From Macrostomum lignano (lineage: Eukaryota), in contig NIVC01000413.1 of the NCBI GenBank assembly GCA_002269645.1, positions 496,001 to 560,000 of the forward strand: a stretch of 64,000 nt of DNA. Reading direction: 5' to 3'. Below, one piece after another: positions 21,501 through 61,576 of this stretch; position 1 is the stretch's first letter, and every line of letters starts with the position of its first letter. Both the position numbers and the translations under genes were made by a program. Below the pieces are notes generated by a model, which did no database searches, was not told the DNA's origin, and worked only from the letters and a program-made list of their open reading frames with translations.

Positions 21501-24500
21501 CTTTTGGACTCCAAAAAAGCAAGGCCACCGACCGTGACCTCAAAAATGAAGCAAAGCGAACCAAAGAGCAGACCAACAGCAGAGATGCCCGTGGCTGCAA
21601 ACAAGAGCACAGAGGAAACGCGGAGACAGCAACCGAGGGCGAGGGAAACTGCTGACAGTAGGGCGACGCCTAACGCTAAACTAGCGGCTGACTACAGATA
21701 GTGTATAATATAAACAACTTAAATAGGACAAACCAATGTCATCTTGAAGCTTAAAGCGTACAAACCTTTTTCTATTGTCCCTGTGTTGTGTTGTGTGTTC
21801 TATTTTTAGATTATGCTTATTATGTAGCCTTAGCAACAAAAAGACACATTGGAAAGTAAGTAAAAAAGTAATTATTTATAGTGTACTTTAGCTGCTGTTT
21901 CTATTTTTATATTTGCATCAATGTACAAATATTAATTCGTCATAAGATTGCGACATACTGTATATCATAACTTGGATTGAAAATGATTATAAGACATGGC
22001 AGAGCGTCTAGCGATAAAGAGGTTTGTTCTTCTCAATTATGGAACGATAATTTTCGAATTCGTTTTCTAAAAAAATTTTTAAAACTGACACAAACCCAAC
22101 AGGAAAGCGCAGAACCTTATGCAAGCGGACCTGACCTACACAGCCCTGATGCTGCACAGGCGCTCCCGTCTATCCTGGTCTCTAAGTCTCTGGCACAGCG
22201 CTATGCTCAGACGTCGACCAGAAACCGTTGTTAAATTGGCGTCTGCTTTAACTGCCGCGTCTTCTACTACTAGTAGTAGTCGAAGCAGTAGCGGCGCAGT
22301 TCAGAGCGGCAGATTTGGCAGAGCCAGCGGCGCAAACACCAGAGACCCGGCAAAGACTGAAAAATCGGCCATTTTAATCCTGCCGGGCACTACCGGCCTG
22401 CGCAATCTTGGCAACACCTGCTACATGAATTCGGTTGTGCAGATATTGAGCCACACGGACTCTTTGGCCGCTTATTTTATCGATCATTTAACTCTGAATG
22501 GAGACGCGGGCGCTGGTCGGGGCTCAGCAGTTGCTAGCCAGACGATTTGTAAATCGCCATCCTGCCCGGCTCATTTGGCCTGCCAATTTGGCAGCGGCAA
22601 TGGTAGGAAATCTTTGAGGCGTCTCACTTCGGTAGAGTGCTTAGAATCTGTTGAGCAACAGAAGAGGCAGAAGGCATCGAAGCAGCAACAAGCGGCATCT
22701 TCTAGTAATAGCGGCGGTCTCAGCGGAGGCAGTCATCAGGCTAATAGTGTCAGAAATTCCGAAGCCATCGCCTATGCGGCTGAAGACGGTCCAACTGGCA
22801 CGCTGGCTGAGGAGCTGCACGCTCTGTTCCGTGTGCTCTGGTCCGGCCGGCGGGCGGTTGTCTCGCCGCAGGGCCTTCTCACCTGCGTCTGGCGCCATGT
22901 GCCATTCTTTCGCGGCTATAAACAGCAGGATGCTCAAGAGTTCCTGTGCGAATTGTTGGACAGATTGCAGAAAGAGCTTAGCCAGGCTCAGAACATTGTG
23001 TCCCGTACATTCCAAGGCTCTTATTTGTCAACTGTTCGCTGTCTGCAATGCGGCAGATGCTCCCAGACTGAGGACATCTTCATGGACATATCGTTGGCCT
23101 TCCCCGAGAGCTGTCACACAGGTGAACAGACCGAGTGTCAGCTAGCCGAGCTATTGAAGCTATTCGCCAGAGAAACTGAGATTGAAGATCGAAGCTACCT
23201 ATGCGAGACTTGCAACAGGTCGCCAATGTCGCAGCGAGCCAAGCGAGTGCCGCAATATTCCAAAGCTAGGCAACAGTTGCGAATCAAGCGCTTGCCAAGG
23301 GTGCTAAGGCTGCATCTGAAACGATTCCGTTGGATTGGTAGGGCCCGAGAGAAAATCTGTGCCAGGGTGTGCTTTACTAGCCAGCTGGATGTGTCCTGCC
23401 TGCTGCCCGATGGCGAGTCCGCAGGTGAAGCAGGAGGCGGCAGCAACATCTATCACCTTACAGGTGTGGTTGTGCACCACGGCAGAGGCTTTCAGTCTGG
23501 CCACTACACGTCATTCTGCTTCAATAAGGCTACTGGTGAGACGAGCTGTATTTGATGTACGTCTGTAATTCTCAATAGAGTCGCCTCTTTAAGAATCGCC
23601 CCCTTAAGAATCGCCCCTCCCTAAGGAATCGCCCCCCTTAGAAATCGCCCCCTTAGAAATCGCCCCCTAAGCAATCGCCCCCCCCCCTGAGGAATCACCC
23701 CCCCCTAAGGAATCGCCCTGTTAAGAATCGCCTCCCTAAGGAATCGCCCCTTAAGATCGCCCCCTTCGAAATCGCCCCCTAAGAAATCGCCCCCCTAAGG
23801 AATCGCCCCCTAAGAAATCGCCCCCTAAGAAATCGCCCCCCTAAGGAATCGCCCCCTAAGAAATCGCCCCCCTAAGGAATCGCTCCTTTAAGAATCGCCC
23901 CTTAGAAATCGCCCCCCCCTAAGGAATCGCCCCCTAAGAATCGCCCCTTAGAAATCGCCCCCCTAAGGAATCGCCCCCTAAGAATCGCCCCTTCGAAATC
24001 GCCCCCCTAAGAAATCGCCCCCCCCTAAGGAATTGCCCCCTTCGAAATCGCCCCCCCCCCAAGAAATAGCCTCCCTAAGAAATCGCCCTTTTAAGAATCG
24101 CCCCCTTAAGAAATCGCCCCCTTTAGAATCGCCACTCCTTAGAATGATCATCGGCTACCTTAGCAAGTTCCAAGTTCACCTGCCAAGAATTGCCCAGCAT
24201 CTCCCAAACCCCTGCCTGTCGCTCCAACACCCGAAGGCTCCTGGCTTCACTGCAACGACGCGTTCGTCCAGCCGAGCAACCTTGACGAAGTACTGGCGTC
24301 ACAGGCTTACATTCTGTTTTATACTCAAGATGAACAGCATGACCTGCCGTCGACTCCAGCATCCACTAGTAGCGGAGCCTCATCAAGCGTCGATCGACCA
24401 ACTAAGCGAGCGTCGACGGCAGCGAGGCCGGCATCTCCGCCTCATGCAGTCGCTACCCTGAATAGCGGCAGCAACGGTCCCAAGATTACAACGCTGACTG

Positions 24501-28111: not shown

Positions 28112-29207
28112 CGAACGGCGACAGGCACTCGCACAGCATGCCACGAGTAGAGATGACATCGGGAGCGAAGTCCCCGATTCCTGTGCCCCACATGCCGGCA
28201 AAGTTCTCAATATGGGGCATGTTGTCTCCAGGCAGTCCACAGGGAGGCATTGATGGCGATGCCGCATGGCTGCCAGCTCCAGCCTCCGGCCGGTTCCACA
28301 CTGCCAGGCGCCTGAACTCCGCCAAGGAGCATGTCTCCTATGCCGGCCATGTACGTGTTGTACAGCTGCAGCATGTGCAGCTTCTCAGCCTCACTGGTCA
28401 CGTCCGACATCATCGCCAGGCCGCCATCCGTCTCGCATTTCTCTTTTCCTTGGTTCCAAGTCATGTAGGCTGGGGAGACAACGTTGTGCACCTTGTACTT
28501 CACTCCGCACAGGTCGTCTCCGTAGCCAGCCGGACACAGCGCGCCCGCCTCGAGTCCCGGCTGCTGCTTCACAAACACCCGGCCTCTCCTGGAGCAGCCG
28601 CAGTCCCTCACCGACTTGCTGCACCTGTCGAACACGAACAGCTGGCACGGACCGTCAGCCAGGCTGAAGGCCTGACAGCGAGCGTTGTCATCACAAGCCA
28701 AGGCGCATCCGGTAGTGGGATTTCGAGTCACCAAGTTAGGAACCGTCTCCGTGAAGTCGGCCGTGATGCACAAGTAGCCGGTGATCAGGCTGTAGGTTTC
28801 CAGCGTTGCGCCTGAAAATCGATGGTAGTAAATTTTGAAATTCGGTCGCTGATGCCAATTCTGCACATTCCGCTGACCGCTGAGCATGTACATGTGCGCC
28901 AATATTGTAACGTACGGCACACACTCATGCACACACTCTCACAGGATGTACAGCGGGCCCTGACCGTCTAATCGTCAGACATGTACACTCCCTGTGCCTT
29001 GGAGTTCGGCATTCATGGCTGTGAATCGCACGGCAACCCCAAGTCGCAGCGCAAGAGTCAGACGCTGAGCTGCTCTGCCCCTGATACTCGTAGGCTAGAT
29101 CGAGTTTTTTAATAATACCAGTATTTATGGTTCTTAAGGACCCTACCTGGAATCCGCAGAGCCAGAACGATAATCGATAGCTTAGCCTGCACTTCGACTT
29201 TGGTCAT
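28107..29207 (-). pseudogene. PAN/apple-like + C-type lectin gene, copy 1, frameshifted near the 3' end
   Basis: Inferred exon 1 29207-29147 (MTKVEVQAKLSIIVLALRIPG, donor G|GTAGG) and exon 2 28811-28107 (acceptor TTTCAG). Nearly identical to 34468-35235 in the middle. An 8-nt deletion near 28231 (corresponding to 34593-34600) shifts the frame before EPGNN. This could be an allele or an assembly error. Confidence 0.7.
28905..29035 (-). mobile_element. Internal fragment of the SINE family seen at 30827-31189, inside the lectin copy 1 intron
   Basis: Shared GGCACACACTCA...CAGGA(G)TGTACAGCGG...CATGTACACT...GCCTTG...GGC..T.AATCG with 30950-31075. Confidence 0.65.
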
Positions 29208-31600: not shown

Positions 31601-32082
31601 TCTAGAGTATGGCTACAACACAACACAGATACCGAGTGGCCTGCCAAGGAAAAAGACCATGTTACAATATTATAAATTTCCTTGATTAACTTATTGTTGT
31701 CCAAAAAACTACTAATCAACAAATCAGACTACTATAATTAGTAGTATCGCATACTAATTGCTAGGAAAGAATTAATAACGACAGACAAGCCGATCTGGGA
31801 GCAGTTGTGGTCATGAGGACTGACTAGATTAGTCAACTGGAGCATTAATTTGACTTCGATGCCAGCCTTGATGCAGATGTGGAAACTGTGCGAGCGGTCA
31901 AGAGATCAGATCGAGATTTTTAAAAAGAAAATTCAATGGTTGCTATGAACTGTAGAAGTAGTAGCTAAGGTAAATAACAAAAGCTTGCTCTGTTACGACA
32001 GGAGCACTTGATATAATAAGCAAATAATGGTTACTATGGTTGGTAGGAGTGGTTGCTATGTTCGGTAGGACAGGTAGCTAGA

Positions 32083-32610
32083 GCACGAACACTAGCTACT
32101 ACAGCACGGACACTAGCTACTACAGCACGGACACTAGCTACTACAGCACGGACACTAGCTACTACAGCACGGACACTAGCTACTACAGCACGGACACTAG
32201 CTACTACAGCACGGACACTAGCTACTACAGCACGGACACTAGCTACTACAGCACGGACACTAGCTACTACAGCACGGATACTAGCTACTACAGCACGGAC
32301 ACTAGCTACTACAGCACGGACACTAGCTACTACAGCACGGACACTAGCTAATACAGCACGGACACTAGCTAGTACAGCACGGACACTAGCTACTACAGCA
32401 CGGACACTAGCTACTACAGCACGGACACTAGCTACTACAGCACGGACACTAGCTACTACAGCACGGACACTAGCTACTACAGCACGGACACTAGCTACTA
32501 CAGCACGGACACTAGCTACTACAGCACGGACACTAGCTAATACAGCACGGACACTAGCTACTACAGCACGGACACTAGCTACTACAGCACGGACACTAGC
32601 TACTAGAGCA
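32083..32610. repeat. 21-bp minisatellite (GACACTAGCTACTACAGCACG)
   Basis: Direct periodicity. Confidence 0.96.
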
Positions 32611-33844
32611 CGTGTTACTCGTCATTGTCGTAGCGACATACTCTTTCATACTGAACTTTGAATGCATCGTAAACTCAAAAAATTGTTTTAGCCATCTCTA
32701 TCCGTGCAGGCTCTCTCTCTCTGTTTCTCTCTCTCTCTCTCTCTCTCTCCCTCTCTCTTTCGTCTTCTTAATTGATCAGGACATCGATGGGGCGAAAAAT
32801 ATCTTCATCCAACCATGCTGAGAGGCTCCCGCTGAGCGCGTCTGAGAGAGAGGGAGGGAGAGATAAAGGGGGAGAGAGTAGTCAGTCGGTGCATCGAGCT
32901 TGGTTGCTAAACTAACTCCAGAAAGTTTATATTTAGGCTCTGGTTTTGGCCAGAGCTATTTGATAAAAAAACCTGGCACGCTCCGTCAACCATGACTCGC
33001 TTCCAGCTTTTCTGACTTTTCTTCATCCCATCTCTCCATACGCCTTGCTGCTGCATGCCAAACATACGAGCTCACTTGGGGGCAAATTTCATCAAAGCAT
33101 TTATCCATATTGAGTATATCAATCCTTATAAGCCCGCTTGTGATCACTGGGCAGATCAGTTTATCATTTTCAAAGTATATAGCTACATGCTATGGTGGAC
33201 AGTGACCGGGCCATGAAGAGATTGAGTCCCGCTTCTGATGTCGTAACGTTGCTTACTTAGCACTCTATATTTGACAGAGGTTGCTGACTGTGCTCAAACT
33301 CGATTTAGTAGGCGGCTACTTAGGATATATATAGGATCAATAGTAGTATAGCGATAGGAGTGACCTTGACTTTTCGATAGTGTTTGTTATGCTCTTGCAA
33401 CTTTGTCTCTGCACACGAAGGCCCGACTACTAAACTAGCTCTTGTGGCATTAACAATTTTCAGAACTTGCTAATGCTGAAAAACGACAGGCATAATTTTC
33501 GTATTATTTCAGCCTGTTCTTTACTACTGAATGGCTAAAATATCCAACCAAAACTTTCTATCTTTTCTAAAAGTTCAGAGGCAATGCGAGTTCTTGGACA
33601 GTTAAAAAACAAAAGCCTCTTAAAGCCTTGTCAATGTCCTTCTCTGCTCGGCACGGAAAAAATGATCTGCGATTGTTTTGTTCTGCTTTGAAAATTTAAG
33701 GAATGCATTCGTAGAAAAATATTTTAACAGTACTCAAAAGGATGGGAGGAATCCTTTCTATAACTGTAGTCGCAAAATTATAAAGAATTTCAGTATAATG
33801 ACCAATGAATTTAGTGTTTAGTGGGAGAGGACAGTCGATAGTAA

Positions 33845-34467: not shown

Positions 34468-35235
34468 TCAGTGGAATGGCGACAAGCACTCGCACAGCAT
34501 GCCACGAGCATTGCCTGCGGCAGGATCAAAGTCCCCGATTCCGGTGCCCCACTTGCCGGCCACATTCTCAATATGGGGCATGTTGTTTCCAGGCTCTCCG
34601 GCAGTCCACAGGGAGGCATTGATGGCGATGCCGCAGGGCTGCCAGCTCCAGCCTCCGGCCGGTTCCACACTGCCAGGCGCCTGAACTCCGCCAAGGAACA
34701 TGTCTCCTATGCCGGCCATGTACGTGTTGTACAGCTGCAGCATGTGCAGCTTCTCAGCCTCACTGGTCACGTCCGACATCATCACTAGGCCGCCATCCGT
34801 CTCGCATTTCTCTTTGCCTTGGTTCCACGTCATTGTGTCTGGCCATAGGACGTTGTGCACCTTGTACTTCACTCCGCACAGGTCGTCTCCGTAGCCAGAC
34901 GGACACAGCGCGCCCGCCTCGAGTCCCGGCTGCTGCTTCACAAACACGCGGCCTTTCCTGGAGCAGCCGCAGTCCCTCACCGACTTGCTGCACCGGTCGA
35001 ACACGAACAGCTGGCACGGACCGTCAGCCAGGCTGAAGGCCTGACAGCGCAGCCTGCGGCCGCACTGAGCAGCGCAAGTGGTGGCAGTCTTGGCACCTGG
35101 AGCAGTTTCAATAAACTCACTGTTGATGCACAGAAAGCCCTCGATCCGATGGAATTCGTCCTTGGTAAACCCGTGCCGCGAAGGAACGATTGCAGCCAGC
35201 ACAATAAGCAGTTTTGAAAATTTTATCCAAAGCAT
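34468..35235 (-). CDS. Secreted PAN/apple-like + C-type lectin protein, copy 2 (intronless, intact, about 255 aa)
   Basis: Signal-like MLWIKFSKLLIVLAAIVPSRHG from the Met at 35235 (the ORF extends to 35280). PAN-like C..QC....RCQAFSL...CQL. CTLD features: MTWNQGKEKC, LGG, WSW, W..GEPGNN, EN, GDF, LCE. Confidence 0.8.
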   Translation of the reverse strand: MLWIKFSKLLIVLAAIVPSRHGFTKDEFHRIEGFLCINSEFIETAPGAKTATTCAAQCGRRLRCQAFSLADGPCQLFVFDRCSKSVRDCGCSRKGRVFVKQQPGLEAGALCPSGYGDDLCGVKYKVHNVLWPDTMTWNQGKEKCETDGGLVMMSDVTSEAEKLHMLQLYNTYMAGIGDMFLGGVQAPGSVEPAGGWSWQPCGIAINASLWTAGEPGNNMPHIENVAGKWGTGIGDFDPAAGNARGMLCECLSPFH

Positions 35236-35659
35236 GTCGCCTTCACGGAACTGCACTGCAGCAAGCGATTTTTGTCTCAATAATTTCAGCGGCGATTAAT
35301 TCGAGAGCGCCTTCTCGCTTTCGCTTTTACCTTCCAATGATATTTCTGCTCTGTTGTAGCTGCGTTGCTATGCAGCGCGAGACGCAGTGCGCAATTTTCA
35401 TTTCAGTTCCCTTCCATTATCGCACTTTGTTAGTTGATTCAAATTGAAAGGATCAATTACGTCGTAGCTTTTCATTTTACTTAAGAGAGTCTTATATGGC
35501 AGTTCGCGTTATGGCTTTTTGCATTTGTTGAACATTTATAGATTGATCTGAATTTTGATTTTTAGTTAAGTGCTAGATTAGATTGAAGACAAATTTATTT
35601 TACGAAGCAGAACTAGCAGGTGCTACGTAAGCGCAATTTATCTAAAAGGGATTTGCGAA

Positions 35660-39310: not shown

Positions 39311-41080
39311 AGGATCTGGAATGTCTAGCTCAGAGTCTCGAGAAGGATGGATCAGCCGTAGAAATACTTTTATAATTTAGTTGACAAAAAAGTCCCACCT
39401 CTGATGGTGGTTCGACAAAACCCAGCCAGCCGGTCAGTCAGCCAACTAAGACTTTTAATAAACTTGTGAAGTGCCTCCACTGGCCCTTTAGCCTTCTTAG
39501 CTTCAGAAGTGGCCCCTTGCACGGTTGCCAAGAAAGTGAATAAGAGCGTCGCCCGATGAGGTCGCGAGGGTCCCAGCAGCAAAAATGAGATAAAAGATGA
39601 AGGAAAAGGCGTGTGTGTGTGTGTGTGTGTGTGCGTGTGTGACTATGAATTGAGTCAATGCGCGATTTCTTGAGTGCCGGCCCTGCCGGATCGATCTAAT
39701 AAATAAAGCATATTTAGGCGCAACAGACTGACGAGGGGGTAAGGTCCTATAATATGGGAGAGGCTGGAGGAGCTCGCACGGAGTCAAGCACTCCACAATT
39801 AATCATATCATGGTAGTTGGGTCTGAGGATTGGGGCGCGGCAGTGGAGAAAAAAGTTGATGGGAGAAGTTGACAGGATCGAGTTGTTTTTGTGTGCACAC
39901 TGTGGGGAAGAGAAACTCGCACAGCCTAGCGGTGTTTCATCCGTGGTGCACTTGATAACTCCTTCGCGTATCTTGAAATTGCATTTTTCTTTGCTTTTTT
40001 TTATTGCTGGCAAAATTTCGTGATTGAAGTTTTCAAAATTGGAAAGATATCTTTACAAAAACGGATGATTTGATGAGAAAGAAACATAACCTCAATTCCT
40101 TAGATCTGTCACGATCACGGCTCACTAATGGGAGCCAAAATCAACCGAATCTGCTTTAAAAAAACATTGCTTATCTTTTTTACCTTTGCAAGACGGTCCC
40201 TGTCAATTAGTGCCTGCTATGCAGCTTCTTCTCTAATTTCTAATCAGGAGAAGCAAAGGACAAAGCGCGATAGAATCAAACGACTAAGAAATGGACTTTG
40301 ACTACGGATAGCTTTAATCGAACTTTTCCGTTCATATATGCTGCTATAGGTTAGGATGCGAACTTCAATGTCCTTAGCGACTGGGGCTTGGTAAATCCCT
40401 TGCTTGAAGCTGTTGCATGCGCAAAACATGGGGCTTAGGCATCGATCGGTCAGAGAAAACCGCAGTTGCAGCTGGGCTGACATCCGGGGCCGAACAGATG
40501 CCTATAGAGAGCGAAATCAGCATTGAATATTGAATGCTGTTAGACGTTCACATGAGCTCTTCCTTGTAGTTCTCGATGACAACAGGCAAGTCAAAGCTAC
40601 GTAGGTGCACGAGCAGCAAATGGGATAACAACCCATGAGGACCAACCCCCAAGACATGAAAGCGTCCTTGTGTTGTGTTCATTACATTCCAATTTTGATA
40701 TCAAACAGAAGACTGAATTGTTAATTGAATTTTGCGCCATTTCCATTTCCATCTTAGCATCGTCGTTTTTATTTATAATTTTGCTCGGGACTTGATGCAA
40801 CTGCAGAAGCAAACGAGGGACTTACAGATGTGGAATCCTGACATTACTTTATAGTTTGCAACACAGATCGAGTTATTGGAAAATAAGTTTCGGCTATGTC
40901 AGAGAATCGAGCGCCTAATATCAGTTGCTCTGCCTTGCTTCTGTCTGCATGCTGACTACAGGAAGTTTTCATTCATATAGGTATTATTATTTCAAGTTGC
41001 TGGGCATGCAATTTTTAACGATGACTGTAGAGCCACCTGATCTTCGCACGATTCTTGTTGGTAAGTCATCCATCCGTCCT

Positions 41081-42019
41081 TTACCGTCCCCACGGTACGA
41101 CTCCGTAAGCGCGCTTGCCCCACGGTACGACTCCGTAAGCGCGCTTGCCCCACGGTACGACTCCGTAAGCGCGTTTGCCCCACGGTACGGCTCCGTAAGC
41201 GCGTTTGCCCCACGGTACGACTCCGTAAGCGCGTTTGCCCCACGGTACGACTCCGTAAGCGCGTTTGCCCCACGGTACGACTCCGTAAGCGCGTTTTTCG
41301 ACGACATCATCTTCGTCAATATCGATGGAGCTGCTGTGCGGAGCAGCTAGAGCGCAGGTTGCGCAGGCGACGGCAAGGATCAGCGCCAGCAGGGTGGCTT
41401 CGTGATTTCGAACCTGTAGAAAAAGGAGAATTTCGACCTCTTTAGAAATCAGCAAGTTGCTATTCGCTCCTAAGCTGGCTTCCTTTTCACAAAATTGACA
41501 ATTAGTAGAAATTCCGGCAACCCAAGGGCGAACAAAAAGTAAAAAAAGAGCCATCCTGCTCTGCAAAGGAAATTCAACTTGCCTAGCCAATTCCTGCTCA
41601 TTTTCCTCTTTAGGTTTCTATTAGCAAAAGTGGCGCCGCTGGGGCATGGTCCAGCCGTACTCCATCACGTCTCGAGCATTAAGTTTCTAACAGAGCCTCA
41701 ACCGCGCATGCGCAGAACAGCTATTGCCGAAATTAGTTAAAAGAAGAAAAAATTAAGAGTTGGGAATCAAATCTCCGGGCGTGCCTCTTTCGCTTTCTAG
41801 GAAACTCTGATTTCAAATTCCTTCAAGCTTGGAGGCTGCCGTCGTGCTTCAGCTCTAAATCTTATCTGTTTTTAGAGTCATCATGCAGCCGCTCAAATAG
41901 GCATTCTGTTGTTACTTTCTTCTGAGATTAAACTTATCCAACTTAAGCAAGGTAACAGCAGATGATAAAAGCGGAACTTTTTTTCTGTGAGAAGAGATGA
42001 AACTTGAGCAACTTACCAT
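41081..42019 (-). CDS. Neuropeptide precursor (PWamide type) with 6x AYGVVPW-amide and 1x AYGAVPW-amide, 111 aa
   Basis: ATG-only coding exon 42019-42017 followed by a consensus donor GTAAGT, acceptor TTTTTCTACAG, and exon 41413-41081. Encodes signal peptide MVRNHEATLLALILAVACATCALA, an acidic spacer, seven KR-flanked Gly-extended peptides and a terminal PWGR*. Units vary synonymously (AAA/AAG Lys). Confidence 0.9.
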
Positions 42020-42117
42020 TTTGTCCTGTTTGTTTAGTCAATTGGTGATTTTTTTAACTGTGGCTGCGCGCACTACAAGGAGTGGAGGAACTTCTTCGAC
42101 GGCAGCTGGGCCAGCCT

Positions 42118-42223
42118 CTTATAAGCGTCATCGCGACAGCTTCTTTGACTGGACAAATCATTTCTCTCTCTCTCAACCAGTCTCAGAAAGCCGCTCGCCA
42201 AGGAAGGCCCTGCTCACCATTGG
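42118..42223 (-). promoter_or_regulatory. Candidate core promoter of the neuropeptide gene
   Basis: Minus strand: TATAAG (42123-42118), CRE half-site TGACG (42130-42126) and CCAAT (42223-42219), about 100-200 nt upstream of the ATG. Confidence 0.5.
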
Positions 42224-42389: not shown

Positions 42390-44730
42390 AAGACAGAGGT
42401 ATAGATCAAGAGACAGAGGTATAGATCAAGAGACAGAGGTATAGATCAAGAGACAGAGGTATAGATCAAGAGACAGAGGTATAGATCAAGAGAGACAGAG
42501 GTATAGATCAAGAGACAGAGGGATGGATCAAGAGGGACAGAGGGATAGATCAAGAGGGAAAAGGGATACATCAAGAGGGAAAAGGGATAGATCAAGAGGG
42601 AAAAGGGATACATCAAGAGGGAAAAGGGATAGATCAAGAGGGAAAAGGGATACATCAAGAGGGAAAAGGGATACATCAAGAGGGAAAAGGGATAGATCAA
42701 GAGGGAAAAGGGATACATCAAGAGGGAAAAGGGATACATCAAGAGGGAAAAGGGATAGATCAAGAGGGAAAAGGGATACATCAAGAGGGAAAAGGGATAC
42801 ATCAAGAGGGAAAAGGGATAGATCAAGAGGGAAAAGGGATACATCAAGAGGGAAAAGGGATACATCAAGAGGGAAAAGGGATACATCAAGAGAGACAGAG
42901 GTATAGATCAAGAGACAGAGGTATAGATCAAGAGACAGAGGTATAGATCAAGAGAGACAGAGGTATAGATCAAGAGACAGAGGTATAGATCAAGAGACAG
43001 AGGTATAGATCAAGAGACAGAGGTATAGATCAAGAGACAGAGGTATAGATCAAGAGACAGAGGTATAGATCAAGAGAGACAGAGGTATAGATCAAGAGAC
43101 AGAGGTATAGATCAAGAGAGACAGAGGTATAGATCAAGAGAGACAGAGGTATAGATCAAGAGACAGAGGTATAGATCAAGAGACAGAGGTATAGATCAAG
43201 AGACAGAGGTATAGATCAAGAGACAGAGGTATAGATCAAGAGACAGAGGTATAGATCAAGAGAGACAGAGGTATAGATCAAGAGACAGAGGTATAGATCA
43301 AGAGACAGAGGTATAGATCAAGAGAGACAGAGGTATAGATCAAGAGACAGAGGTATAGATCAAGAGACAGAGGTATAGATCAAGAGAGACAGAGGTATAG
43401 ATCAAGAGACAGAGGTATAGATCAAGAGACAGAGGTATAGATCAAGAGACAGAGGTATAGATCAAGAGAGACAGAGGTATAGATCAAGAGACAGAGGTAT
43501 AGATCAAGAGAGACAGAGGTATAGATCAAGAGAGACAGAGGTATAGATCAAGAGACAGAGGTATAGATCAAGAGACAGAGGTATAGATCAAGAGAGACAG
43601 AGGTATAGATCAAGAGACAGAGGTATAGATCAAGAGACAGAGGTATAGATCAAGAGAGACAGAGGTATAGATCAAGAGACAGAGGTATAGATCAAGAGAC
43701 AGAGGTATAGATCAAGAGACAGAGGTATAGATCAAGAGACAGAGGTATAGATCAAGAGGGACAGAGGTATAGATCAAGAGAGACCGAGGTATAGATCAAG
43801 AGACAGAGGTATAGATCAAGAGACAGAGGTATAGATCAAGAGAGACAGAGGTATAGATCAAGAGACAGAGGTATAGATCAAGAGAGACAGAGGTATAGAT
43901 CTAGAGAGACAGAGGTATAGATCAAGAGAGACAGAGGTATAGATCAAGAGACAGAGGTATAGATCAAGAGACAGAGGTATAGATCAAGAGACAGAGGTAT
44001 AGATCAAGAGACAGAGGTATAGATCAAGAGACAGAGGTATAGATCAAGAGAGACAGAGGTATAGATCAAGAGACAGAGGTATAGATCAAGAGAGACAGAG
44101 GTATAGATCAAGAGACAGAGGTATAGATCAAGAGACAGAGGTATAGATCAAGAGACAGAGGTATAGATCAAGAGACAGAGGTATAGATCAAGAGAGACAG
44201 AGGTATAGATCAAGAGACAGAGGTATAGATCAAGAGAGACAGAGGTATAGATCAAGAGACAGAGGTATAGATCAAGAGACAGAGGTATAGATCAAGAGAC
44301 AGAGGTATAGATCAAGAGAGACAGAGGTATAGATCAAGAGACAGAGGTATAGATCAAGAGAGACAGAGGTATAGATCAAGAGAGACAGAGGTATAGATCA
44401 AGAGAGACAGAGGTATAGATCAAGAGAGACAGAGGTATAGATCAAGAGACAGAGGTATAGATCAAGAGACAGAGGTATAGATCAAGAGAGAAAAGGGATA
44501 GATCAAGAGGGAAAAGGGATAGATCAAAAGAGAAAAGGGATAAATCAAGAGAGAAAAGGGATAGATCAAGAGGGAAAAGGGATAGATCAAGAGGGAAAAG
44601 GGATAGATCAAGAGGGAAAAGGGATAGATCAAGAGGGAAAAGGGATAGATCAAGAGAGAAAAGGGATAGATCAAGAGAGAAAAGGGATAGATCAAGAGGG
44701 AAAAGGGATAGATCAAGAGAGAATAGGGAC
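42390..44730. repeat. Compound 19/21-bp purine-rich minisatellite (GAGACAGAGGTATAGATCAA and GAGGGAAAAGGGATAGATCAA variants)
   Basis: Direct periodicity with shared GATCAAGAG core. Confidence 0.95.
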
Positions 44731-47035: not shown

Positions 47036-47535
47036 TCAGCACCAGAGGCGCCAGCACCAGAGGCGCCAGCACCAGAGGCGCCAGCACCAGAGGCGCCAGC
47101 ACCAGAGGCGCCAGCACCAGAGGCGCCAGCACCAGAGGCGCCAGCACCAGAGGCGCCAGCACCAGAGGCGCCAGCACCAGAGGCGCCAGCACCAGAGGCG
47201 CCAGCACCAGAGGCGCCAGCACCAGAGGCGCCAGCACCAGAGGCGCCAGCACCAGAGGCGCCAGCACCAGAGGCGCCAGCACCAGAGGCGCCAGCACCAG
47301 AGGCGCCAGCACCAGAGGCGCCAGCACCAGAGGCGCCAGCACCAGAGGCGCCAGCACCAGAGGCGCCAGCACCAGAGGCGCCAGCACCAGAGGCGCCAGC
47401 ACCAGAGGCGCCAGCACCAGAGGCGCCAGCACCAGAGGCGCCAGCACCAGAGGCGCCAGCACCAGAGGCGCCAGCACCAGAGGCGCCAGCACCAGAGGCG
47501 CCAGCACCAGAGGCGCCAGCACCAGAGGCGCCAGC
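47036..47535. repeat. Perfect 15-bp array (ACCAGAGGCGCCAGC) x33
   Basis: Direct reading. Confidence 0.98.
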
Positions 47536-48249
47536 AGCCACTCTGCAAAGCAGGCAGCAGGAGCCCTCTACATTCAAAATAAATTTCACCTGACGGGGGA
47601 AGCCGGGACGCCTCGCCCAGCTTCCCGAGAATGCTGCGAGGCAGAAAAAACTCGATGATAACCCGGGTTGAAAAAAGGAAGGCGGAGAAAATTACAGGTA
47701 GCGAGCAGGAAAATAAATTGGGAGCGCTACGTGGGAGGCGATGGATGAAGAGGGAAGAAGGAAGCTGCGAGTTGCCCGACGCCAAAATCCTGTTTACTGA
47801 AGATTTTTCTGAGCATTGGAGCGGAGTAGGCTGATGGCTATCCACTGCTAACTACCAGTCTACTCCAGGAAAATGCGTAATTATCCATTCTAATGGGCCT
47901 TGGAAACATAGTCAGCTGTTTTTTTGGGAAGGGGTTTGTTCGAAACTCCGGAAGGAACTTCTGTCTTTCCTCTCCAAGGAAAGAAAAACAACCCCTTTTA
48001 GGCTGAGGATTCCGTGGAGAAATCTTATGCGTGCTCGACTAGAAAACGAAAAATTTAAGGAAAACACGATTGAGGTGAAAAAATCCCTCAATGAGCAGTG
48101 TTTTTATCGATGAGAGTTCTTACTCTCAGGGTCTGTTTTTGACTGCGTCAGCACGTACCACAGTTCGCTCACTTGGCAATCATTTATAAGGAAATTTCAG
48201 CATTCATAAATCAAATGCAACTCAACCGCAACACGGCTAAAACTTTATC

Positions 48250-58782: not shown

Positions 58783-59350
58783 CTAAGTACTCGGCAGCAG
58801 CGAGTCCCGGTCATTGGAAACGATCGCCTCGCCCTCGCCCTCGCCCTCGCACTTCCCATCGCCTTCGCCCAGAAGATCGCCAGACTCTGCCGCAACATCG
58901 GCGAGGTTCCTCCGCAGTCTAGCCGGAGCCACCAGCAGTGCCAGCAGCGCGGCAAAGCAGACAGCCGCCATGGTCCAATTGATCCACAGCATTCTACCGG
59001 CCTTGTCAACCCCGACTCCGCCTGTTACTACGCCTAGAAACGCCATAGCAACCAGATTATTACCTAGCGTTAGGAAGCCACAGATCACGGATTCTGGGGC
59101 TGGATAAGCCAGATCGGCGGCCAGCTCGAAGAAGAATGGCACCGCCGAGTAGAGGAAAACGCATCCGGCACAGGAGGTGGCGAAGATCAGGGATGGCCAG
59201 GTGGGCAGGATGCCCAGACAGGTGAGACTGCGGGATGGCAGGTGCGAAGTGCAATTGCAGCGGAACTTGGTAAGGTGGATCTTAATAGGAAAGCTTAGAA
59301 TATGCCTGAACAGCATTTGCACATGCGCGGCTTTAGTGTTATACAGGGCC

Positions 59351-59405
<55 letters not shown>

Positions 59406-59406
59406 G

Positions 59407-59437
<31 letters not shown>

Positions 59438-59466
59438 CAGATAGATAGATAGATAGATAGATAGAC

Positions 59467-59561
<95 letters not shown>

Positions 59562-59562
59562 C

Positions 59563-59621
<59 letters not shown>

Positions 59622-59650
59622 CAGATAGATAGATAGATAGATAGATAGAC

Positions 59651-59705
<55 letters not shown>

Positions 59706-59722
59706 CAGATAGATAGATAGAC

Positions 59723-59757
<35 letters not shown>

Positions 59758-59808
59758 CAGATAGATAGATAGACAGATAGATAGATAGATAGATACATAG
59801 ATAGATAC

Positions 59809-59857
<49 letters not shown>

Positions 59858-59858
59858 C

Positions 59859-59893
<35 letters not shown>

Positions 59894-60079
59894 CAGATAG
59901 ATAGATAGACAGATAGATAGATAGATAGATACATAGATAGATACATAGATACATAGATAGATAGATAGACAGATAGATTGATAGATAGATAGACAGATAG
60001 ATAGATAGACAGATAGATAGATAGATAGATACATAGATAGATACATAGATAGATAGATAGATAGATAGACAGATAGATT

Positions 60080-60116
<37 letters not shown>

Positions 60117-61576
60117 GTAGGTAGACGACCCTTTCCTCAGCTTAAACCCTTCAACCGCGCCTTTCCACACAACCCCCACCGCCCGCCCCAATTTTTATTG
60201 CCTTTCTCGGAATTCCAGTCTAAAGCTGCCATGTAAATTTTAATGGACTGGCTGATGTACATTATTGCTGAACCAATTAGCAAGTTGTTTACGACGCCTG
60301 AAAGCTTGGGCTTCAAAACTTATACGAGTAAAGTCATTCCAGCTGCCTTTATTTTTATAAAATAGCTTATGTATTCCTCTTTGCTACTGAACTGAAAGTA
60401 GAAAGCTGTTTTACCAAGCATTTATGCCTGAGTGGCCCATCTAGTTATTTTAGTATCTGCGACCGTGGCGCGACAGTCAGACGCGCACCTAAGCTAGTTT
60501 GAGAACGCTCACCTGAAGCAGAGATAGGCTACGCCAGACAGCAACAGCAGAATCAACAGACAAGGCCTCAATCGATTCCTCAACCGGCCGCTCAACAATG
60601 CCACAGGCAGGCAGACTAAACCAGCTGACAGAACCGACCAGAAACCGGCAGCGTCCGCCTGCGCAACACTGGCGCCGAGGGTTTCCACGTTCAAATTAAA
60701 TGCGGCAAGAAATCCTCCATTAACGCCAGCAACAATTGAATAGGCCAGACAGGCTGACCACAGTGCGAAACAAGTGCCCCCGTTATCGCCTCGGCCAATC
60801 AGCTGCGCGAGACTGTCTCGAAAGCTGAGTCGATTAACCTGAGCACTGGCGCTGCTAGGCAGTTTAGGCTTAGCGGGGAAGTAAGCAACGAATAATAACA
60901 GCGAGAAGAATGCTAATCCGCATTCCAGGTACAGCAGGTGGGCTACACTCTGTCGAATATCTTCCACAGTGGTATTAGTTGAATTCTTAACAAACAGATG
61001 GCCGAATTGGAATGAGAACGCGCTACCAACATAGTTACTAAGCGTAGCCACCGATGTTGATAGAATCCGTTCACCGGGTGGAAACCATACGGCCGATAGG
61101 GCGGGTGGCAACGCCATAGCAACCGGGCAGGACAGGCCGCAGAATAGGGCATCAATATGGCAAACAATTGTGAATGCTTCCGTGAAGGAAGCTGACTGGG
61201 CAAGGAAGCACGGAGCCACTGTGCCAACAGCCATTAGAGAGGCACCGGACAGACAGGCGACTTTCAAACCGCAGCGATTAACAATGATGAGGCTGGGAGC
61301 CAGCGCGATCACAAACCCGATGGGAGCCCAATTTGGCAGCATGCCAAACTCGAAATTGCCCCAGGAGTAAGCCGACTGCATTGCGTCTTTTAAAGGGCCC
61401 CAGGTGTTCCAAATCACGCCCTGATTGAATGCAAGCAAGCAATAGACTGCCAGAATGTACCAGCGACGCTTGTACACGCGGTAAGGACAAGGATTGATGA
61501 CGTCACTATGCGAGTCTCCGCGCGCTGCGCCCATAGCGTCCTCCAGCGTGTCGTAAATTTGCACCTGGGCAGCCAT
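58783..61576 (-). CDS. SLC49A4: MFS transporter of the SLC49 family, SLC49A4/DIRC2-like, about 502 aa
   Basis: Exons 61576-60513 (donor AG|GTGAG) and 59227-58783 (acceptor CCCGCAG), phase 2 consistent. Motifs [47 protein letters not shown]...YP.PE...CG and W.NW. Confidence 0.88.
59351..60120. repeat. (GATA)n/(GACA) array in the SLC49A4-like intron
   Basis: Direct reading. Confidence 0.98.

What the first reader, a model, noticed from the sequence alone, without database searches (positions are those of the whole stretch)
41081..42019. Hidden polypeptide neuropeptide precursor encoding AYGVVPW-amide x6 and AYGAVPW-amide x1
Seen: a 30-bp tandem repeat among dozens of non-coding minisatellites that reads as KR-AYGVVPW-G seven times. 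It follows a hydrophobic signal peptide and acidic spacer, ends in GR-stop, and starts from an exon contributing only ATG (ATG|GTAAGT). Known: dibasic KR cleavage plus C-terminal Gly is the canonical amidated-neuropeptide signature, and PWamide/Wamide peptides occur in flatworms and other lophotrochozoans. Inference: a PWamide-family hormone that repeat masking and gene finders would easily miss. I cannot tell whether this exact peptide has been described.
Basis: partly seen in the sequence, partly recalled or inferred. Interest (0 to 1): 0.78.

Follow-up and report, generated by a model that had tools for sequence, protein, structure and literature searches.

The report
Unannotated PWamide neuropeptide gene, Macrostomum
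The 30-bp repeat is the coding core of a real but unannotated peptide-hormone gene of the flatworm Macrostomum lignano, predicted to yield seven copies of AYG(V/A)VPW-amide; it is a new paralogue of a known flatworm peptide family, not a new kind of signal.

Summary
On the minus strand, 41081-41413 reads signal peptide, acidic spacer, EKR, then six AYGVVPW and one AYGAVPW, each followed by G-KR, and the last by G-R-stop.

The window comes from the flatworm Macrostomum lignano. A neighbouring gene is 100% identical to BOX15_Mlig004333g2.

The decisive evidence is a paralogue in the same genome, BOX15_Mlig029361g1. It has the same architecture but encodes AYGSMPW 20 times and also ends PWGR-stop. 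The two repeat units differ by five silent changes in the eight conserved codons and by amino-acid changes only at peptide positions 4 and 5. That pattern indicates purifying selection, not a neutral minisatellite.

The motif A-Y-x-x-x-P-W-amide matches the mass-spectrometry-confirmed schistosome npp-5 peptides AAYMDLPW-amide and AAYIDLPW-amide.

No protein containing AYGVVPW is in the 5.8-billion-cluster protein database or in the searchable literature. AYGSMPW-amide is already published.

Exon 2 has no ATG of its own. It could equally come from the M. lignano spliced leader, which ends in ATG. Both give the same protein.

Expression could not be tested. Verdict: new member of a known kind, modest interest.

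The parts
42116..42123 (-). TATA-like box (TATAAGAG), about 100 nt upstream of the candidate start codon. A CCAAT motif lies at 42219-42223.
   Evidence: Read directly from the sequence. There is no other ATG between this box and ATG 42019. This is a consensus match only, not a tested promoter.
42017..42019 (-). Candidate initiator ATG. It would be the only coding triplet of exon 1. Context is ACAAAATG|G.
   Evidence: It is the best in-frame start/donor combination within 3 kb upstream of the acceptor, matching 8 of 9 donor consensus positions. Only 3 ATGGTRAG sites occur in the whole window on both strands, and 2 of them lie here.
42011..42016 (-). Splice donor GTAAGT.
   Evidence: It matches the M. 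lignano cis-donor motif GT[G/A]AG (PMC8629364).
41414..42016 (-). Intron of 603 nt in the cis model, or the 3' part of an outron in the trans-splicing model.
   Evidence: GC is 42%, against 58% in the adjoining non-repeat coding part. The unspliced in-frame reading has stop codons further upstream.
41414..41430 (-). Polypyrimidine tract and acceptor (CTCCTTTTTCTACAG|).
   Evidence: CTACAG fits the M. lignano SL trans-splice acceptor motif [T/C]TNCAG (PMC8629364).
41345..41413 (-). Signal peptide residues 2-24 (VRNHEATLLALILAVACATCALA). Predicted cleavage is ALA|AP.
   Evidence: Maximum Kyte-Doolittle hydropathy over a 10-residue window is 3.18, and the -3/-1 rule is satisfied after residue 24 (heuristic; SignalP was not available). 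The region aligns to the paralogue's leader.
41291..41344 (-). Acidic spacer APHSSSIDIDEDDVVE followed by the first KR cleavage site.
   Evidence: Translation. It aligns to the paralogue spacer SEGGEDQEFDAEKR and resembles EIDDDDVA in the M. lignano FRWamide precursor.
41084..41290 (-). Seven peptide units: six AYGVVPW and one AYGAVPW (copy 4). Each is followed by an amidation-donor Gly and KR. The last is followed by G-R.
   Evidence: The array is 73% identical in DNA to the AYGSMPW array of the paralogue.
41081..41083 (-). Stop codon TAA directly after the terminal Gly-Arg.
   Evidence: The paralogue also ends PWGR-stop.
40986..40991 (-). AATAAT, a possible variant polyadenylation signal about 90 nt after the stop (low confidence).
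   Evidence: Read only. It was not tested.

Best explanation
This is an intact prohormone gene of Macrostomum lignano that is absent from public protein sets. It encodes a 111-residue secretory precursor.

Inferred pathway, from the established prohormone route (signal peptidase, PC2-type convertase, carboxypeptidase, peptidylglycine alpha-amidating monooxygenase):
1. The signal peptide is removed after Ala24.
2. A convertase cuts at each KR and at the terminal R.
3. The basic residues are trimmed.
4. Each C-terminal Gly is converted to an amide.

The products would be six AYGVVPW-NH2 and one AYGAVPW-NH2, with [M+H]+ of 790.42 and 762.39.

The gene is a paralogue of the M. lignano AYGSMPW-amide gene. 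It belongs with the flatworm npp-5/PWamide peptides. It most likely acts as a neuronal or neurosecretory signal through an unidentified receptor.

The start codon is not in exon 2. It is most likely supplied by a cis first exon whose only coding triplet is ATG. Alternatively it comes from the ATG at the 3' end of the trans-spliced leader.

Shown here: the sequence anatomy, the paralogy, the selection signature and the motif match to npp-5.
Inferred only: transcription, processing, amidation, the cell type of expression and the receptor.
For: Anatomy: ORF, signal peptide, spacer, KR/G sites and GR-stop.

Organism: M. lignano.

Paralogue P0039 (BOX15_Mlig029361g1/g2):
- BLASTP E = 5e-37 over the whole precursor.
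- The non-repeat N-terminal parts alone align at 40% identity, E = 9e-5.
- The genomic ORF in L002 is intact with 20 AYGSMPW units and the same PWGR-stop ending.

Selection signature:
- The consensus units differ by 5 silent substitutions in the 8 conserved codons (K, R, A, Y, G, P, W, G).
- Replacements occur only at peptide positions 4 and 5.
- In a simulation, the chance that 5 random substitutions in those codons are all silent is about 1.5e-4.

Exon boundary: GC falls from 58% to 42% exactly at the proposed acceptor.

Family link:
- Sm/Sj-npp-5 peptides AAYMDLPWa and AAYIDLPWa and Smed-npp-5 peptides SAWRDMPWa and PNWKDMPWa are confirmed by mass spectrometry (PMC2953531; PMC9495596).
- A query built only from npp-5 motifs returned the M. 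lignano paralogue as its top hit, E = 1.5e-6 against 5.8 billion sequences.
- The window protein aligns to Sm-npp-5 as RAYxxxPWGKRA.

Literature: AYGSMPWa has been treated as a product of the M. lignano Wamide propeptide (PMC9234716).
Against: - No transcript, EST or peptide evidence could be obtained with these tools.
- No protein or fragment containing these words is present in a collection that includes assemblies of public sequencing runs. A nearly perfect 30-bp repeat may well break short-read assemblies, but that is my inference.
- The array is homogenised (98% identity), so variation inside it carries little independent information.
- Similarity to npp-5 is confined to an 8-residue motif. 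The Asp that is conserved in most npp-5 peptides is absent.
- The signal peptide was judged by heuristics only.
- AYGSMPWa gave no response on three M. lignano FaNaC-related (DEG/ENaC) channels (PMC9234716), so no receptor is known.
Confidence: 0.8

Rival explanations
1. Same gene and same protein, but the initiator AUG is donated by the spliced leader, not by a cis exon. The 35-nt M. lignano SL ends in ...TTGCATG. Trans-splicing it to the acceptor at 41414/41413 gives ATG|GTT CGA AAT..., that is MVRNHEATLL...
For: - The SL sequence, its GTAAG donor and the trans-acceptor motif [T/C]TNCAG are given in PMC8629364.
- The window acceptor CTACAG fits that motif.
- About 30% of M. lignano genes are SL trans-spliced.
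- The flatworm SL 3' AUG is documented as an initiator methionine (Cheng et al. 2006, as cited in PMC9851317).
Against: - A near-consensus cis donor, ATG|GTAAGT, lies 603 nt upstream on the same strand. It is the first ATG after a TATA-like box.
- An upstream cis donor within the transcript normally favours cis-splicing (Conrad et al. 1993, as cited in PMC8629364).
- The Kozak context of the cis ATG (A at -3) is better than that of the SL ATG (T at -3).
Confidence: 0.3
2. An unspliced gene model. Translation starts at the in-frame ATG at 41554 (MALFLLFVRPWVAG...) and reads through the proposed intron end into the same ORF.
For: The ORF is open from 41590, and this ATG is followed by a short hydrophobic stretch.
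Against: - GC is 40% in that extension against 58% in the coding part.
- Hydropathy of the alternative leader is weak, at 1.88.
- The real leader would then become an internal membrane segment.
- The paralogue shows no similarity to the extension, and the alignment begins at residue 3.
- A strong polypyrimidine acceptor sits exactly at the point where homology starts.
Confidence: 0.06
3. A decaying or never-functional copy. In this reading a minisatellite derived from a duplicated AYGSMPW-type gene happens still to be open because its 30-bp period is a multiple of 3.
For: - The locus lies in a gene-poor stretch in which 38% of the sequence is tandem repeats.
- With a 30-bp unit, copy-number change never breaks the frame.
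- 5 of 6 frames of the array are open.
- There is no expression evidence and no database protein.
Against: - The unique parts (leader, spacer, EKR and the terminal GR-stop) are all intact and in frame.
- Divergence from the paralogue is 27% in DNA, yet silent in all 8 conserved codons.
- Start and splice signals are intact.
Confidence: 0.1
4. A processed secreted peptide that is not a neuropeptide, for example a gland, reproductive or pheromone-like product made by the same convertase and amidation machinery.
For: Several planarian prohormone genes are expressed outside the central nervous system, in pharynx, gut, glands and reproductive organs (PMC2953531). Nothing in the sequence specifies the cell type.
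Against: Known relatives are neuronal or neural-associated. S. mansoni PWamide marks a neuron subcluster in miracidia (PMC11349301). PWamide antibody stains brain cells in Maritigrella larvae (PMC4124852).
Confidence: 0.15

Closest known systems
M. lignano AYGSMPW-amide precursor: BOX15_Mlig029361g1/g2 (PAA46830.1, PAA69966.1). The peptide is also reported from transcript Mlig032062.g1 in PMC9234716.
   Same: - Same species.
- Same order of parts: leader, acidic spacer, EKR, tandem 10-residue units A-Y-G-x-x-P-W-G-K-R, last unit ending G-R-stop.
- 30-bp period.
- BLASTP E = 5e-37, and the leader/spacer also aligns.
   Different: - Peptide positions 4-5 are S-M in the paralogue and V-V (or A-V) here.
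- The paralogue has 20 units and this gene has 7.
- The paralogue carries its own ATG just after an acceptor-like site, whereas the window gene has no ATG in exon 2.
- The genomic neighbours differ: LSM and ARMT1-like there, lectin-like ORFs and SLC49A4 here.
- The paralogue is annotated, though wrongly as 96 aa. The window gene is in no protein set.
Flatworm npp-5 / PWamide prohormones: S. mansoni Smp_052880 (Smp_340860), S. japonicum Sj-npp-5, and Schmidtea Smed-npp-5 (BK007015).
   Same: - Flatworm origin and a small precursor. Sm-npp-5 is also 111 aa.
- C-terminal -P-W-Gly followed by basic residues.
- Ala plus an aromatic residue exactly five positions before the terminal Trp: AAYMDLPW against AYGVVPW.
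- A hydrophobic residue before the Pro.
   Different: - npp-5 peptides have 8 residues with a conserved Asp (xDLPW or xDMPW). This one is a heptapeptide with G-V-V.
- Schistosome precursors carry 2 copies at the extreme C-terminus after a long spacer and end in Gly. This gene has 7 tandem copies.
- No detectable similarity outside the peptides.
- The Sm-npp-5 coding sequence is a single exon.
Myoinhibitory peptide / allatostatin-B 'Wamide' family of other spiralians and arthropods.
   Same: - C-terminal Trp-amide.
- Multi-copy precursor.
- Dandamudi et al. grouped the M. lignano AYGSMPWa propeptide with Wamide propeptides (PMC9234716).
   Different: - The canonical second Trp several residues upstream is replaced by Tyr at -5.
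- No receptor link is known.
- AYGSMPWa did not gate the M. lignano FaNaC-related (DEG/ENaC) channels tested.
- The relationship is a lead, not a demonstrated orthology.
Polyclad-type PWamide precursor: P0048 (ENA contig ERZ27295729:k141_803904) and Maritigrella GVWSNDPW-amide.
   Same: Tandem xxMGK(I/L)PWGKR units with 11-residue spacing and an acidic spacer before the array. BLASTP E = 2e-22 to the window protein. It also contains GVWSHDPWGKR, which links multi-copy PWamides with the W-x4-W npp-5 type.
   Different: - The source organism is unknown.
- The peptide has 8 residues, is basic (contains Lys) and lacks A-Y.
- The similarity is largely driven by the PWGKR periodicity.
M. lignano SGVFRW-amide precursor: BOX15_Mlig026077g1/g2 (P0122).
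   Same: Same species. It has a leader, an acidic EIDDDDV spacer, and tandem 10-residue units ending W-G-K-R.
   Different: - The C-terminus is FRW-amide, not PW-amide.
- Its intron lies after the signal peptide, not after the ATG.

Membership tests
Amidated multi-copy neuropeptide prohormone (generic) | N-terminal cleavable signal peptide | tested here: met
   The hydrophobic core LLALILAVAC has hydropathy 3.18, and ALA|AP satisfies the -3/-1 rule. This is heuristic only, because SignalP was not available.
Amidated multi-copy neuropeptide prohormone (generic) | Each peptide copy is flanked by basic cleavage sites and followed by Gly as amide donor | tested here: met
   There are seven units, KR-AYG(V/A)VPW-G, and the last is followed by R-stop.
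Amidated multi-copy neuropeptide prohormone (generic) | Transcribed, processed and amidated in secretory or neuronal cells | not testable with these tools
   No RNA-seq, EST or peptidomic resource was available. The protein database holds no fragment of the precursor.
M. lignano AYGxxPW-amide gene group (BOX15_Mlig029361; Mlig032062.g1) | Homology across leader, spacer, repeat unit and C-terminal GR-stop | tested here: met
   BLASTP E = 5e-37 overall and 9e-5 for the non-repeat part. Both genes end PWGR-stop.
M. lignano AYGxxPW-amide gene group (BOX15_Mlig029361; Mlig032062.g1) | Conservation of peptide core and processing residues despite DNA divergence | tested here: met
   There are 5 silent and 0 replacement differences in 8 conserved codons. 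The simulated probability is about 1.5e-4.
Flatworm npp-5 / PWamide | C-terminal Pro-Trp-amide signature (PW-G-basic) | tested here: met
   compared with AAYMDLPWa, AAYIDLPWa, SAWRDMPWa and PNWKDMPWa.
Flatworm npp-5 / PWamide | Aromatic residue (Y or W) five positions before the terminal Trp, preceded by Ala or another small residue | tested here: met
   A-Y-G-V-V-P-W aligns without gaps to A-Y-M-D-L-P-W.
Flatworm npp-5 / PWamide | Asp at position -3 from the terminal Trp (xDLPW, xDMPW) | tested here: not met
   The window peptide has Val (Ala in copy 4) and the paralogue has Ser at that position. P0048 and Maritigrella peptides also deviate, so the feature may not be universal.
Flatworm npp-5 / PWamide | Precursor homology outside the mature peptides | tested here: inconclusive
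   The BLASTP alignment to Sm-npp-5 covers only the peptide and cleavage-site region, E = 5e-5 pairwise. This is usual for short prohormones, but it leaves orthology unproven.
MIP / allatostatin-B Wamide | Two Trp residues, W(X5-8)W-amide | tested here: not met
   There is only one Trp per peptide, with Tyr at -5.
MIP / allatostatin-B Wamide | Activates a MIP/sex-peptide-type GPCR or a Wamide-gated channel | not testable with these tools
   The only related datum is that AYGSMPWa did not activate three M. lignano FaNaC-related (DEG/ENaC) channels in oocytes (PMC9234716).
Neutral non-coding minisatellite | No constraint on reading frame, flanks or codon positions | tested here: not met
   The array is joined in frame to a leader and spacer and ends in register with GR-stop. 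Divergence from the paralogue is silent-only in the conserved codons. Contrast the neighbouring array 42391-44720.

The most novel reading that the evidence does not exclude
The gene may be a case of interchangeable start-codon supply. Exon 2 has no ATG. A cis micro-exon contributes nothing to the protein except ATG, and its junction (ATG|GTAAG) is identical to the donor junction of the M. lignano spliced-leader RNA (…GCATG|GTAAG). [quoted passage not shown] If both are used, or if the micro-exon evolved to replace dependence on the SL's AUG (or the reverse), the locus would be a natural example of how flatworm genes move between SL-donated and self-encoded initiation.
Probability: 0.15. Interest if true: 0.5.

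Novelty: new member of a known kind. Interest (0 to 1): 0.36.

Why it matters
- It adds a peptide, AYGVVPW-NH2 with the minor form AYGAVPW-NH2, to the neuropeptide catalogue of a genetically tractable regeneration and reproduction model. It also shows that the M. lignano PWamide group has at least two divergent genes.
- It gives a macrostomid link (A-Y-x-x-x-P-W-amide) to the schistosome npp-5 peptides. One of those, AAYMDLPW-NH2, alters cercarial behaviour (PMC9495596).
- It is a concrete warning for annotation. In a genome where over a third of this window is tandem repeats, one tandem-repeat prohormone gene is absent from protein sets. Its paralogue is truncated by an artificial intron, from 247 codons to 96 aa.
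- A search for in-frame KR/G periodicity next to a signal peptide would probably recover more such genes.

Tried and rejected
Searches that found nothing:
- Protein database search with the 111-aa precursor. Only one candidate shared any 5-residue word, and none scored.
- Literature search for AYGVVPW and sub-strings. No relevant hit. The supplement of PMC9234716 holds no such sequence.
- Exact look-ups of neighbouring window ORFs, made to reach a duplicated copy of the locus (TTI1 and the lectin-like ORF). They are not on record, so no homeologous copy of the window gene could be compared.
- Metagenome contig scan with the exon 2 protein. 123 pattern matches, none a relative.
- Rfam and tRNA scans of the window. 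Nothing.

Papers not available: McVeigh et al. 2009 is not held. I therefore cannot say whether an M. lignano npp-5 was listed there.

Ideas rejected:
- A downstream FRW-amide exon, as implied for Mlig032062.g1. I searched the window, L001 and L002 and found none. The overlap of the stop codon with a donor-like G|GTAAAG (paralogue: G|GTGAGC) therefore stays unexplained.
- That the upstream ATG|GTAAGT is an SL RNA gene. The SL sequence is absent from the window.

Hits of limited value: most of the 388 hits in the all-against-library HMMER search are unrelated repeat proteins or other GKR-periodic prohormones (FLamide and others). They were not used as evidence of homology.
Full report
**1. The observation**

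Tandem Repeats Finder reports a 30-bp array at 41088-41296 with 7.0 copies and 98% matches. On the minus strand, the ORF ending at 41081 reads as follows:
- ...VRNHEATLLALILAVACATCALAAPHSSSIDIDEDDVVEKR
- then AYGVVPWGKR three times, AYGAVPWGKR once, AYGVVPWGKR twice
- then AYGVVPWGR-stop.

Joining ATG 42019-42017 to 41413 gives a 336-nt, 111-codon reading frame. Inside the array the only replacement is V to A in copy 4. The other variants are silent: AAA to AAG twice and GGC to GGA once.

**2. Is it more than chance?**

The window is extraordinarily repeat-rich. 46 tandem arrays cover 38% of it. Two cautions apply:
- Five of the six frames of this array are open, so an open frame means little.
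- The adjacent 20-bp minisatellite (42391-44720) reads RDxSRGKR, with up to 16 GKR sites in one open stretch. GKR periodicity alone can therefore arise by accident.

What sets this array apart is the combination of features:
- It is joined in frame to a strongly hydrophobic leader (hydropathy 3.18) with an ALA|AP cleavage site, followed by an acidic spacer.
- It ends in register with G-R-stop.
- GC content falls from 58% to 42% exactly at a polypyrimidine-CAG acceptor at the 5' edge of the leader.

**3. Organism and neighbourhood**

The MFS-transporter ORF at 60509-61576 is 100% identical to BOX15_Mlig004333g2 of Macrostomum lignano, on a 474,898-bp contig. Other genes in the window are:
- a TTI1 homologue (13829-16744)
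- a UCH-type ubiquitin hydrolase (22119-23555)
- the SLC49A4/DIRC2-like transporter.

The candidate gene sits alone in a roughly 25-kb stretch that is otherwise filled with minisatellites.

**4. The decisive comparison: a paralogue**

The precursor itself found nothing in the 5.8-billion-cluster protein database. I then searched with a query made only of published npp-5 motifs. That search returned an M. lignano protein as its best hit: P0039, BOX15_Mlig029361g1, 96 aa. Its sequence is MKPWTTAAVWGRAHLAIMLLFLAITCASGAASASEGGEDQEFDAEKR, then AYGSMPWGKR repeated, ending AYGSMPWGR.

The genomic loci show an uninterrupted 247-codon ORF with 20 units in L002. L001 has the same 20 units with a 1-bp deletion in an A-run, and its flanks are 100% identical to L002. 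The NCBI 96-aa product therefore rests on an artificial intron.

How the window protein compares with P0039:
- The whole precursors align at E = 5e-37.
- The non-repeat N-terminal parts alone align at 40% identity, E = 9e-5, starting at residue 3 of the window protein. That is right at the proposed exon boundary.
- The arrays are 73% identical in DNA.
- The consensus units are AAA CGC GCT TAC GGA GTC GTA CCG TGG GGC here and AAG CGA GCC TAC GGA AGC ATG CCA TGG GGA in the paralogue.
- All five differences in the eight codons for K, R, A, Y, G, P, W and G are silent. The only replacements are at peptide positions 4 and 5.
- In a simulation, five random substitutions in those codons were all silent with probability about 1.5e-4.

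This is the expected signature of two functional prohormone genes that keep their cleavage sites, amide donor and peptide core while varying two inner residues. It argues strongly against a neutral minisatellite.

**5. Family placement**

Flatworm PWamides are a described family (npp-5):
- Sm/Sj-npp-5 give AAYMDLPWa and AAYIDLPWa. Smed-npp-5 gives PNWKDMPWa and SAWRDMPWa. These are confirmed by mass spectrometry (PMC2953531; PMC9495596).
- The S. mansoni gene marks a neuron subcluster in miracidia (PMC11349301).
- AAYMDLPW-NH2 alters cercarial behaviour.
- A polyclad has GVWSNDPWamide in brain cells (PMC4124852).

AYGVVPW aligns without gaps to the last seven residues of AAYMDLPW. Ala-Tyr, a hydrophobic residue before Pro, and Pro-Trp-Gly-Lys-Arg are shared. 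The conserved Asp is not shared, the peptide is one residue shorter, and nothing outside the peptides aligns. I therefore treat npp-5 membership as likely but not proven.

The all-against-library HMMER search added three relevant hits:
- an ENA contig protein with eleven xxMGK(I/L)PWGKR units (counting a first, PWSKR-ended one) plus GVWSHDPWGKR (P0048)
- a second M. lignano Wamide precursor, SGVFRW-amide (BOX15_Mlig026077g1/g2, P0122)
- the Trichoplax PWN precursor (P0137).

Most other hits are unrelated repeat proteins or other GKR-periodic prohormones.

In the literature, AYGSMPWa is already recorded. It is listed together with GRTNNKNVFRWa as coming from propeptide Mlig032062.g1, among peptides drawn from RFamide, FVRIamide and Wamide propeptides. 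It was tested, without response, on M. lignano FaNaC-related (DEG/ENaC) channels (PMC9234716). AYGVVPW was not found in any searchable paper.

**6. How the start codon is supplied**

Exon 2 has no ATG between the acceptor and the leader. I enumerated every ATG within 3 kb upstream that can be joined in frame through a GT. The best by far is ATG|GTAAGT at 42019-42011, matching 8 of 9 donor consensus positions. Points in its favour:
- It has A at -3 and G at +4.
- It is the first ATG after a TATAAGAG box at 42123-42116.
- Only three ATGGTRAG sites exist in the whole window on both strands. Two of them lie within 210 nt here. The second, at 42220, overlaps a CCAAT motif and may be coincidental.

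However, the M. lignano spliced leader is CGGTCTCTTACTGCGAAGACTCAATTTATTGCATG. It ends in ATG and is followed by GTAAG in the SL RNA gene, and the trans-acceptor motif is [T/C]TNCAG (PMC8629364). The window acceptor is CTACAG. Trans-splicing would therefore produce exactly the same ORF. Flatworm SL AUGs are documented initiators (Cheng et al. 2006, cited in PMC9851317).

An upstream cis donor normally favours cis-splicing, so I rate the three models as follows:
- cis ATG exon: about 0.55
- SL-donated AUG: about 0.3
- unspliced start at 41554: about 0.06. It is disfavoured by composition, weak hydropathy and lack of homology.

Only transcript data can decide.

**7. Mechanism**

The following steps are inferred from the established prohormone pathway, not shown here:
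1. Co-translational entry into the ER and signal cleavage after Ala24.
2. Convertase cleavage after each KR and at the terminal R.
3. Carboxypeptidase trimming of the basic residues.
4. Amidation using the exposed Gly.

The result would be six AYGVVPW-NH2 and one AYGAVPW-NH2 per precursor, with [M+H]+ of 790.4246 and 762.3933. The receptor is unknown.

**8. What could not be done**

- No expression or peptidomic data were accessible.
- No homeologous copy of this locus could be reached.
- No orthologue turned up in metagenome contigs.
- McVeigh et al. 2009 could not be read.

**9. Verdict**

This is a genuine-looking paralogue of a known flatworm PWamide gene that is absent from public protein sets. 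It is a new member of a known kind and of modest interest. Its practical value is as an annotation lesson. The small open question is whether the ATG comes from a micro-exon or from the spliced leader.

Noticed in passing
L001 10001-10740 and L002 7126-7866 (NIVC01001276.1 and NIVC01004687.1): The NCBI model of the paralogue BOX15_Mlig029361g1/g2 is 96 aa with 5 peptide copies. The genomic ORF in L002 is 247 codons with 20 AYGSMPW units. L001 differs by a 1-bp deletion in an A-run and by silent GGA/GGC variants, and its flanks are 100% identical to L002. The annotation apparently placed an artificial intron across the repeat.
   Followed up: yes
window 42391-44720 (+ strand reading, e.g. 42523-42906): The 20/42-bp minisatellite immediately upstream of the gene translates in stretches as RDRSRGKRDTSRGKR, with up to 16 G-K-R sites in one open stretch. 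It has no leader or start. It is a useful false-positive control for scans that look for neuropeptide-like periodicity.
   Followed up: partly
window 41081-41086, and L002 7858-7866: In both paralogues the stop codon overlaps a donor-like site: CG|GTAAAG here and AG|GTGAGC in the paralogue. A published transcript (Mlig032062.g1) is said to encode both AYGSMPWa and GRTNNKNVFRWa. No such downstream exon was found in the window, L001 or L002. The possibility of 3' alternative splicing remains unexplained.
   Followed up: partly
window 28207-28932 (-) and 34468-35280 (-): Two near-identical Cys-rich ORFs of 241 and 270 aa share the stretch ...CQAFSLADGPCQLFVFDRCSKSVRDCGCSR.... One has a leader-like N-terminus. 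They are separated by long minisatellites. They have no Pfam hit, and the one looked up (34468-35235) has no exact match on record. They look like a tandemly duplicated secreted-protein gene.
   Followed up: partly
window 42211-42220 and 42011-42019 (-): Two ATG|GTRAG junctions lie 200 nt apart upstream of the same acceptor, out of only three in the whole 64-kb window on both strands. The distal one overlaps a CCAAT motif. They may be alternative ATG-only first exons or a coincidence.
   Followed up: partly
L005 3001-3560 (NIVC01001908.1), protein P0122: BOX15_Mlig026077g1/g2 is annotated as a hypothetical protein. It is a clear multi-copy SGVFRW-amide prohormone with a leader, an acidic EIDDDDV spacer, and an intron after the signal peptide.
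   Followed up: partly
L003 410-1153 (ENA ERZ27295729:k141_803904), protein P0048: An unnamed assembly contig encodes a PWamide precursor with eleven xxMGK(I/L)PWGKR units (the first ending PWSKR) plus one GVWSHDPWGKR. The last is nearly the Maritigrella peptide GVWSNDPWamide. It is probably from a polyclad-like flatworm.
   Followed up: no
window 1-64000: 46 tandem-repeat arrays make up 38% of the window. Several have periods that are multiples of 3 and long open frames, for example 18826-20005, 32078-32612 and 47037-47536. These generate many spurious long ORFs.
   Followed up: partly
window 13829-16744 (+), 22119-23555 (+), 58783-61576 (-): The flanking genes have very long exons: a TTI1 homologue (971-codon ORF), a UCH-type ubiquitin hydrolase, and an SLC49A4/DIRC2-like MFS transporter interrupted by an AGAT-type microsatellite intron.
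   Followed up: partly
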